A stretch of 61,476 nt of DNA from Octopus bimaculoides (lineage: Eukaryota). Under the pieces are notes generated by a model. That model searched no databases. It saw only the letters and a list, made by a program, of their open reading frames with translations, and was not told the DNA's origin. A program made the translations under genes and the position numbers. Numbering within the stretch: the stretch's first letter is position 1; the number at the start of each line of letters is the position of its first letter. Location: assembly GCF_001194135.2 (NCBI RefSeq), contig NC_068985.1, positions 25,078,841 through 25,140,316 of the forward strand, written 5' to 3'. Positions 1,369 through 60,906 of this stretch are shown piece by piece.

Positions 1369-1598
1369 ATACAACCGTTGCCACAAAACAGGGTCTTCCC
1401 CTCTACAGACCAAATGAAACCACAGCAGAGGCATTTATGATACTAGAAACTAAAGTTTCATTTCTTGAAGAATCTATTGGAGAAACAATCAAGAGAAATG
1501 ATTTTTCAGCAAGTTTAAAGGAAATTTCATTGCCAGAACTGGATGCATTGAGGGAAAAGCTGGTGACCTCTGGATGCAAAAATATGGACATCATCCCG
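1369..1598 (+). CDS. Exon 1 in window (phase 1 to 0)
   Basis: ttcaatag|at..ccg|gtaagg; (D)[46 protein letters not shown]. Confidence 0.85.

Positions 1599-60906: not shown

What the first reader, a model, noticed from the sequence alone, without database searches (positions are those of the whole stretch)
1369..60906. Giant invertebrate stereocilin/otoancorin-family gene, a candidate cephalopod hair-cell anchoring protein
Seen: 26 phase-consistent exons and more than 25 sequons outside the repeat. Established: vertebrate stereocilin and otoancorin are secreted or GPI-linked hair-cell proteins that link stereocilia and attach acellular gels, and mesothelin is the third family member. Inference: the genome looks cephalopod, and cephalopods have statocysts and lateral-line-like organs with hair cells, so this could be a statolith/cupula attachment protein. 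It is much longer than the part matching the vertebrate family. No single ORF in the six-frame track reveals it.
Basis: partly seen in the sequence, partly recalled or inferred. Interest (0 to 1): 0.75.

Follow-up and report, generated by a model that had tools for sequence, protein, structure and literature searches.

The report
Octopus stereocilin/otoancorin-family surface glycoprotein gene
The window holds 26 exons (residues 34-1361 of 2400) of an Octopus bimaculoides gene that databases call "uncharacterized", and that is a real relative of the vertebrate inner-ear proteins stereocilin and otoancorin and of mesothelin; whether it works in octopus hair cells is untested.

Summary
A + strand chain of 26 AG/GT-bounded, stop-free exons (1369-60906) translates exactly to residues 34-187 and 419-1361 of RefSeq XP_014777598.1, "uncharacterized protein LOC106874393", Octopus bimaculoides, 2400 aa. 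There are 28 N-glycosylation sequons outside the repeat, against 11 ± 3 in shuffles.

Two assembly gaps lie inside one coding exon, a 96-bp (32-codon) tandem repeat. Its frame is continuous only if the gaps hold repeat units. The other seven gaps are intronic.

Four tests support the family assignment:
- A profile built from a published vertebrate MSLN/OTOA/STRC alignment scores 69 bits on my 21-exon window-only model and 133 bits on the full protein. Shuffles reach 8.5 bits at most.
- Pfam PF21058 (Stereocilin) scores 54.7 bits on the full protein, above its 26.6-bit cutoff.
- A profile with no vertebrate sequences finds human mesothelin first in the PDB.
- An AlphaFold model (pLDDT 86) has mesothelin crystal structures as its top four Foldseek matches.

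The protein has a signal peptide, a GPI-like tail, two family modules and two furin-type sites at mesothelin's cleavage position. It is not a 1:1 orthologue of STRC or OTOA. The hair-cell role remains speculation, because no expression data were reachable.

The parts
1369..1598 (+). Exon 1 in the window (phase 1 to 0). It encodes residues 33 (part) to 109, the first residues after the predicted signal-peptide cleavage site (TFA|D).
   Evidence: Exact match to XP_014777598.1. Acceptor tcaatag|AT, donor CCG|gtaagg.
3963..4081 (+). Exon 2 (phase 0 to 2), residues 110-149.
5022..5100 (+). Exon 3 (phase 2 to 0), residues 149-175.
13889..13924 (+). Exon 4 (phase 0 to 0), residues 176-187.
15938..17201 (+). 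Exon 5, the repeat exon. It encodes a basic Ser/Thr/Asn/Arg-rich region with a 96-bp (32-aa) unit, [32 protein letters not shown], each unit carrying sequons. Two assembly gaps (16236-16710 and 17021-17030) lie inside it, so the true copy number is unknown. RefSeq assigns it residues 188-418.
   Evidence: Acceptor tttgatttctag|CC in phase 0 and donor AAGAAC|gtgagtat in phase 0. Only one of the three + frames of the unit is open. Both flanks match P0001 exactly.
16003..17112 (+). The tandem-repeat array inside exon 5: period 96 bp with a 39-bp sub-period, copies 94-95% identical.
   Evidence: TRF and register analysis.
19903..20046 (+). Exon 6, residues 419-466.
22146..22328 (+). Exon 7, residues 467-527. 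The collinear alignment to the vertebrate family profile starts here, at residue 504.
24784..24893 (+). Exon 8, residues 528-564.
26034..26157 (+). Exon 9, residues 564-605.
27823..28004 (+). Exon 10, residues 606-666.
29878..29971 (+). Exon 11, residues 666-697. The donor at 29971 is the one used by RefSeq; 29969 is an in-frame alternative only if exon 12 is skipped.
31349..31514 (+). Exon 12, residues 698-753. It ends in the furin-type motif RIKR. Its codon-usage score is low, and it is an insertion relative to vertebrate sequences.
31502..31513 (+). Codons for R-I-K-R (residues 749-752), a candidate proprotein-convertase site. It lies 12 residues before the first conserved Cys of module 1 and aligns with the human mesothelin furin site RFRR|EVEKTAC.
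33275..33468 (+). Exon 13, residues 753-817. This is the start of the conserved module and holds the invariant Cys in PLTCRN (33298-33315).
36078..36233 (+). Exon 14, residues 818-869. It holds the family signature [23 protein letters not shown] and is the best single-exon match to the family profile (16.4 bits).
39796..39941 (+). Exon 15, residues 870-918. It holds the invariant L-C of LLCGIG.
42017..42159 (+). Exon 16, residues 918-966. It holds the invariant Cys of DSCNIS and is the end of the strongly conserved module.
43963..44054 (+). Exon 17, residues 966-996.
45440..45561 (+). Exon 18, residues 997-1037.
47011..47156 (+). Exon 19, residues 1037-1086. With exons 16-18 it forms a weaker, partial second copy of the module (residues 934-1078, 18.6 bits).
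48336..48427 (+). Exon 20, residues 1086-1116.
49294..49442 (+). Exon 21, residues 1117-1166.
52389..52531 (+). Exon 22, residues 1166-1214.
54694..54779 (+). Exon 23, residues 1214-1242.
57326..57471 (+). Exon 24, residues 1243-1291.
59990..60126 (+). Exon 25, residues 1291-1337.
60833..60906 (+). Exon 26, residues 1337-1361. This is the last exon in the window; the remaining 1039 codons lie downstream of it.

Best explanation
The window carries 26 exons, encoding residues 34-1361 of 2400, of Octopus bimaculoides LOC106874393. This gene encodes a secreted, heavily N-glycosylated, all-alpha ARM-type solenoid protein of the stereocilin/otoancorin/mesothelin superfamily.

Shown here:
- The exon chain.
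- Homology to the family.
- A mesothelin-like fold for residues 754-1000.
- Sequon enrichment.
- A single N-terminal and a single C-terminal hydrophobic segment.
- Two family modules. Module 1, residues ~504-966, is encoded in the window. Module 2, residues ~2051-2297, is encoded outside it.
- Two R-x-K/R-R motifs at the position of mesothelin's furin site.

Inferred from what the vertebrate members do. The precursor enters the secretory pathway and is glycosylated. It is attached to the apical membrane by a GPI anchor at its C-terminus. It is possibly cut by furin-type convertases into an N-terminal piece, a middle piece and a GPI-anchored C-terminal piece. Its solenoid surface binds glycans of an overlying acellular matrix or mucin, so that it tethers that matrix to the cell surface.

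Which cells and which matrix (statocyst cupula or statolith, epidermal lines, sucker or gut cuticle, mucus) is not known.
For: Gene model:
- Exact identity of the spliced exons to XP_014777598.1.

Sequence homology:
- A profile built from the published vertebrate alignment (PMC2628672, Additional file 1) scores 69.3 bits on the window-only model. The maximum over 1000 shuffles is 8.5 bits.
- The same profile scores 132.8 bits on the full protein.
- Mouse Strc scores 43.9 bits pairwise.
- Pfam PF21058 Stereocilin scores 54.7 bits against a cutoff of 26.6, with its best stretch (residues 866-1026) window-encoded.
- Three Cys are invariant across 12 aligned family sequences.

Structure:
- A profile with no vertebrate sequences finds mesothelin as the top PDB hits, E 0.004.
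- The AF2 model has pLDDT 85.7 and pTM 0.81 and is all helical.
- The top four Foldseek hits among 350,542 PDB chains are human mesothelin, E 7e-5 to 1e-3.

Secretory features:
- 28 sequons against 11 expected.
- Hydropathy peaks occur only at residues 10-26 and 2382-2400.
- The furin-type sites align with mesothelin's.
Against: - No expression, localisation or biochemical data.
- The signal peptide and GPI signal were judged by hydropathy and inspection only, and both lie outside the window.
- The RefSeq protein is itself a computational model.
- The repeat exon runs through two gaps.
- Pfam does not report the window-encoded part on its own, and Pfam Mesothelin PF06060 gives no hit.
- The vertebrate profile was built from machine-read (OCR) sequences that contain errors.
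- Foldseek TM-scores are modest (0.35-0.45).
Confidence: 0.78

Rival explanations
1. The protein is made by statocyst or epidermal-line hair cells and anchors the cupula, statolith or statoconia to their kinocilia and microvilli, as stereocilin and otoancorin anchor the tectorial and otoconial membranes.
For: - Family membership.
- The vertebrate roles of STRC and OTOA (PMC2628672).
- The full protein also has an Asp/Gly/Asn-rich acidic stretch (about residues 1456-1545, 26 Asp in 110 residues). Acidic stretches of this kind are common in proteins that bind calcium carbonate; that link is my inference.
Against: - No expression data.
- The family also has non-sensory members (mesothelin, MPFL).
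- The octopus modules fall outside the vertebrate STRC+OTOA clade, which has 100% bootstrap support, so function cannot be transferred by orthology.
- From my own knowledge: cephalopod hair cells bear kinocilia rather than stereociliary bundles.
Confidence: 0.2
2. A mesothelin-like tether or adhesion protein of non-sensory epithelia (skin, sucker, gut, gill or coelomic linings) that binds mucins or cuticle rather than a sensory gel.
For: - A mesothelin-type fold.
- Furin-type sites at mesothelin's cleavage position; STRC and OTOA lack them in the alignment.
- A mucin-like basic Ser/Thr/Asn repeat.
Against: At sequence level it is closer to STRC and OTOA than to MSLN: 44-47 and 28-48 bits against 10-15 bits. 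There are no expression data either way.
Confidence: 0.4
3. The 2400-aa protein is an annotation artefact that fuses two neighbouring family genes, one ending inside or just after the window.
For: - There are two separate family modules, each preceded by a basic site.
- RefSeq isoforms X1-X7 differ only in how the repeat is threaded, which shows that the model is uncertain there.
- The UniProt model is shorter, 2006 aa.
Against: - No internal signal peptide, stop or hydrophobic GPI-type segment anywhere between residues 27 and 2381.
- All phases are consistent through exon 26, which ends at a GT donor and not at a stop.
Confidence: 0.07
4. The repeat block (15938-17201) is an intronic minisatellite wrongly taken as coding.
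For: - Copies are 94-95% identical.
- One minus-strand frame is also open.
- Only three positions vary among the five in-register copies, so there is no codon-position signal.
- Two gaps lie inside the block.
Against: - The periods of 96 and 39 bp are both multiples of 3.
- Only one + frame is open, and it is the frame set by a good acceptor in phase 0 and closed by a GTGAGT donor in phase 0. Both phases match the flanking exons.
- RefSeq includes it.
- Skipping it also keeps the frame, so this rival cannot be excluded here.
Confidence: 0.15

Closest known systems
Stereocilin (STRC; Pfam PF21058)
   Same: - Window-encoded module 1 gives its best pairwise and sub-family scores to STRC: mouse 43.9 bits, STRC profile 46 bits.
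- The signature ...FGxPxxWsxExixxLGxLLxGLs..., the LCG motif and three conserved Cys are shared.
- Both are helical solenoids, N-glycosylated and secreted.
   Different: - 2400 aa against 1775 aa.
- About 22% identity in the module.
- Two modules instead of one conserved C-terminal region.
- An added basic tandem repeat, an acidic region and furin-type sites.
- It lies outside the vertebrate STRC+OTOA clade in a rough NJ tree.
Otoancorin (OTOA)
   Same: - The C-terminal module 2 (residues 2106-2297, outside the window) scores best with the OTOA profile, 48.5 bits.
- It is followed by a short segment and a C-terminal hydrophobic tail, as expected for a GPI-anchored protein.
   Different: - Otoancorin is about 1150 aa.
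- It has no internal second module, tandem repeat or dibasic site at this position.
Mesothelin precursor (MPF + mesothelin) and MPFL/MSLNL
   Same: - Fold: the top four Foldseek PDB hits are mesothelin.
- A profile with no vertebrate sequences hits mesothelin first in the PDB.
- R-x-K/R-R motifs sit a few residues before the conserved Cys, where mesothelin has its furin site RFRR|EVEKTAC.
- A GPI-type tail is present.
   Different: - Sequence similarity is very weak: 10-15 bits, and pairwise scores near zero.
- Pfam PF06060 gives no hit.
- Mesothelin is about 630 aa.

Membership tests
Stereocilin/otoancorin/mesothelin superfamily | Significant sequence similarity to the conserved region shared by MSLN, MPFL, OTOA and STRC | tested here: met
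   A profile built from the published alignment scores 69.3 bits (E 1.7e-23) on the window-only model. The maximum over 1000 shuffles is 8.5 bits. It scores 132.8 bits on the full protein. In a six-frame scan the top hits are exactly the + strand exons 13-16.
Stereocilin/otoancorin/mesothelin superfamily | Pfam PF21058 (Stereocilin) above the gathering score | tested here: met
   The full RefSeq protein scores 54.7 bits against a cutoff of 26.6, E 1.2e-14, with its best stretch (866-1026) window-encoded. hmmscan does not report the window-encoded part alone. The C-terminal 354 aa alone score 23.9 bits.
Stereocilin/otoancorin/mesothelin superfamily | Pfam PF06060 (Mesothelin) hit | tested here: not met
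   PF06060 is not among the families listed for the window model or for the full protein. This excludes calling it a mesothelin, not membership of the wider family.
Stereocilin/otoancorin/mesothelin superfamily | Conserved cysteines of the C-terminal module | tested here: met
   Three Cys (PLTC, LLCG, DSC) are invariant across the octopus sequence plus 11 vertebrate sequences.
Stereocilin/otoancorin/mesothelin superfamily | All-alpha ARM-type superhelical fold, as in solved mesothelin | tested here: met
   AF2 on residues 754-1000 with a 6-sequence alignment holding no vertebrate sequences gives pLDDT 85.7 and pTM 0.81, with helices only. Foldseek hits 1-4 are 8cyh, 7ued, 8fsl and 7u9j, all mesothelin; designed armadillo repeats follow. 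TM-scores are only 0.35-0.45.
Stereocilin/otoancorin/mesothelin superfamily | Secreted: N-terminal signal peptide and N-glycosylation | tested here: met
   There is a hydropathy peak at residues 10-26 followed by TFA|D, encoded upstream of the window. There are 28 sequons against 11.1 +/- 3.0 in shuffles. No dedicated signal-peptide predictor was available.
Stereocilin/otoancorin/mesothelin superfamily | C-terminal GPI-anchor signal | tested here: inconclusive
   The protein ends ...NNSDGSRSNLNVAVLIFSILLLILY: small polar residues followed by a terminal hydrophobic stretch with no cytoplasmic tail. This is consistent with a GPI signal, but no predictor or experiment was available, and it lies outside the window.
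Stereocilin / otoancorin (as hair-cell proteins) | Expression at the apical surface of hair cells or supporting cells, and attachment of an acellular gel | not testable with these tools
   No expression data were reachable. No paper in the library mentions the gene or its accessions or links the family to cephalopods.
Stereocilin or otoancorin (1:1 orthology) | Grouping inside the vertebrate STRC or OTOA clade | tested here: not met
   In a rough NJ tree on 176 columns, vertebrate STRC+OTOA group with 100% bootstrap to the exclusion of both octopus modules. The placement of the modules is unresolved (8-22%). Module 1 scores best with STRC and module 2 with OTOA.
Mesothelin precursor | Furin cleavage separating an N-terminal fragment from the GPI-anchored C-terminal fragment | tested here: inconclusive
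   The only two R-x-[KR]-R motifs in the 2400 aa (RIKR 749-752 and RRRRRR 2080-2085) align with the mesothelin site just before the conserved Cys. Cleavage itself cannot be tested here.

The most novel reading that the evidence does not exclude
This protostome family member is the apical tether that holds the cupula or statolith on cephalopod statocyst (and epidermal-line) hair cells. On that reading, the molecular link between mechanosensory cells and their overlying gel predates the protostome-deuterostome split instead of being a vertebrate inner-ear invention. The Asp-rich region would bind the aragonite statolith, and furin processing would yield a shed piece and an anchored piece.
Probability: 0.15. 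Interest if true: 0.8.

Novelty: new member of a known kind. Interest (0 to 1): 0.5.

Why it matters
Stereocilin and otoancorin are human deafness genes, and discussion of the family centres on vertebrates. A clear cephalopod member gives a concrete candidate for testing one question. Do the independently elaborated hair-cell organs of cephalopods (statocysts and epidermal lines) use a homologous molecule to couple sensory cells to their accessory gels or stones? The candidate has a signal peptide, a GPI-type tail, two family modules and mesothelin-like processing sites.

It also puts a family name on a RefSeq locus now called "uncharacterized". And it shows that the annotated isoforms of that locus differ only in how the unresolved repeat is threaded.

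Tried and rejected
- **First homologue search.** A rough 718-aa concatenation of ORF pieces found nothing in the search for homologous proteins. An exact substring of the RefSeq protein later also found nothing. The tool evidently does not return the host's own protein, so those negatives carry no weight. Three further calls timed out.
- **Pfam and PDB on my partial models.** These gave no relevant hit. Taken alone they would have wrongly refuted the finding.
- **First exon chaining.** It over-predicted about 60 exons.
- **Stricter 21-exon model.** It was in frame but lacked exons 2-5 and exon 12, and used donor 29969 instead of 29971. The RefSeq protein corrected it.
- **Single-sequence AlphaFold.** It gave pLDDT 51 and was not used.
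- **Codon-position test on the repeat.** Not possible, because only three columns vary.
- **One literature search** was badly framed and gave nothing useful.
- **Intronic minus-strand ORFs** gave no significant Pfam hits.

Full report
**What is in the window.** The window is 61,476 bp with 35.7% G+C and nine N-gaps. No long ORF stands out except in repeats. I chained AG...GT intervals with a codon-usage score and phase bookkeeping and read the doubtful junctions by eye. This gave a + strand, stop-free, phase-consistent chain from 1369 to 60906, the same end points as the finding. My strict version had 21 exons, 963 aa and 27 sequons.

**Identity of the gene.**
- An exhaustive search with one exon (33277-33468, 64 aa) returned a 2400-aa protein, P0001.
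- Its cluster members are XP_014777598.1 and siblings, "uncharacterized protein LOC106874393" of Octopus bimaculoides.
- Splicing 26 exons from the window reproduces P0001 residues 34-187 (exons 1-4) and 419-1361 (exons 6-26) exactly.
- My 21-exon model had missed exons 2-4, the repeat exon 5 and exon 12. At one junction it had taken an alternative in-frame donor. Phase consistency alone therefore does not fix a chain.
- Residues 1-33 (signal peptide) and 1362-2400 are not encoded in the window.

**The gaps.**
- Seven of the nine gaps are in introns.
- Two (16236-16710 and 17021-17030) lie inside exon 5. This exon is a 96-bp (32-codon) tandem array with a 39-bp sub-period.
- Only one + frame of the unit is open. 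It reads [32 protein letters not shown].
- That frame is entered by a good acceptor at 15938 in phase 0. It is left at a GTGAGT donor after 17201 in phase 0, and both phases match the neighbouring exons.
- In nominal coordinates the exon length is 1 mod 3, because of the 10-N placeholder. The repeat register implies missing lengths that restore the frame, but only if the gaps hold nothing but repeat units.
- RefSeq threads fewer units than are visible, and its isoforms X1-X7 differ only in unit number. The copy number is therefore unknown.
- Exon 5 being an intronic minisatellite cannot be excluded, because skipping it also keeps the frame.

**Family test.** Pfam and PDB sequence searches with my partial models were negative. 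I then took the machine-read alignment of MSLN, MPFL, OTOA and STRC from Sathyanarayana et al. 2009 (PMC2628672, Additional file 1) and built a profile from 11 of its rows.
- The profile scores 69.3 bits on the window-only model. One thousand shuffles reach at most 8.5 bits.
- Pairwise, mouse Strc gives 43.9 bits, OTOA 20-25 bits and MSLN about 0.
- The signal lies in exons 13-16.
- On the full protein the profile gives 132.8 bits and shows two modules. Residues 504-941 are window-encoded and best matched by STRC. Residues 2051-2297 lie outside the window and are best matched by OTOA.
- Pfam PF21058 Stereocilin scores 54.7 bits on the full protein, against a cutoff of 26.6. The window part alone is not reported. 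PF06060 Mesothelin never hits.
- Three cysteines are invariant across 12 aligned sequences.
- The profile alignment is collinear over residues 504-941, across two gap-bearing introns.

**Independent structural test.**
- I built a profile from the two octopus modules and three transcript-derived homologues of unknown origin: P0003, P0004 and P0005. Two of them come from sequencing runs SRR33215984 and ERR1719450.
- With no vertebrate sequence in it, this profile finds human mesothelin as the best PDB sequences, E 0.004.
- AlphaFold2 with that 6-row alignment gives a confident all-helical model of residues 754-1000, with pLDDT 85.7 and pTM 0.81. A single-sequence run had failed.
- Foldseek against 350,542 PDB chains returns four human mesothelin structures as ranks 1-4 (E 7e-5 to 1e-3). 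Designed armadillo repeats follow.

**Other features.**
- There are 28 sequons outside the repeat, against 11.1 +/- 3.0 in shuffles.
- The full protein has only two hydrophobic segments: residues 10-26 (signal peptide) and 2382-2400 (terminal tail after small residues, GPI-like). This argues against a fusion of two complete genes.
- The only two R-x-K/R-R motifs are RIKR 749-752 (window 31502-31513) and RRRRRR 2080-2085. Each sits just before the first conserved Cys of a module, aligned with the mesothelin furin site.
- An Asp/Gly/Asn-rich stretch lies at about residues 1456-1545.

**Placement.** In a rough NJ tree, vertebrate STRC+OTOA (100%) and MSLN+MPFL (100%) are each monophyletic. The octopus modules lie outside both, unresolved. 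It is a family member, not an orthologue of a particular vertebrate gene.

**Function.** By homology, the most likely mechanism is a GPI-anchored, glycosylated solenoid that ties an extracellular gel or mucin to the apical membrane, perhaps after convertase processing. Whether the cells are hair cells is untested. No paper in the library mentions the locus or links the family to cephalopods.

**Verdict.** The family and taxon calls are right. The functional idea remains open. This is a new member of a known kind, of moderate interest.

Noticed in passing
window 15938-17201, and the RefSeq isoforms of LOC106874393: RefSeq isoforms X1-X7 (2266-2413 aa) differ from one another only in the number of 13-, 19- or 32-residue repeat units in exon 5. 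The differences lie only in the repeat exon that holds the two assembly gaps, so they may reflect how the model is threaded there, not alternative splicing.
   Followed up: partly
UniProt A0A0L8GVT4 (P0010), compared with window 1369-17201: The UniProt model (2006 aa) starts at Met395, just after the repeat. It therefore lacks the signal peptide, exons 1-4 and the repeat.
   Followed up: partly
P0002 and P0006 (ENA contig of 61,855 bp), compared with window 33275-33468: Two proteins of unknown origin consist of tandem repeats of about 95 aa (...ETYQILYGITEEEFVKQVFGNMEHLSLEQLPNAI...). They match exon 13 ([15 protein letters not shown]...SEQLQSL) at E 8e-15, yet the family profile does not hit them. 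They could be a distant relative of the family's repeat unit or a chance motif match.
   Followed up: no
P0004, residues 75-295: A homologue from a JGI/IMG record of unknown origin is built of near-perfect ~65-aa tandem units (AFGDVSKWTAESIKKVGSVMEGLDRSDIDKISKDTFKASAETFGKVAGWSADQAKTLAKKSKE). This shows the basic repeat of the family very clearly; the octopus motif [23 protein letters not shown] is the same unit.
   Followed up: partly
window 2933-3091, 37692-37850, 44855-45018, 57046-57210 and other sites: A short interspersed element of about 160 bp is present in several copies in the introns, in both orientations. Other dispersed repeats lie at 21499-21775, 23939-24204 and 41113-41356.
   Followed up: no
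window 353-700 (-), 12605-12832 (-), 30524-30985 (-): Intronic or flanking minus-strand ORFs that look like transposable-element remnants: one gag-like, one with only weak, sub-threshold matches to helix-turn-helix families, and one interrupted by the 10-N gap at 30657-30666. None gave a significant Pfam hit.
   Followed up: partly
P0001 residues ~1456-1545 (downstream of the window): An Asp/Gly/Asn-rich acidic low-complexity stretch (26 Asp in 110 residues) lies between the two family modules. The parts of the vertebrate proteins in the alignment I used show nothing like it.
   Followed up: no
tool behaviour: the search for homologous proteins returned no hit even for an exact 237-aa substring of a protein that is in its collection. 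Negative results from that tool for the host's own gene should not be read as absence.
   Followed up: yes
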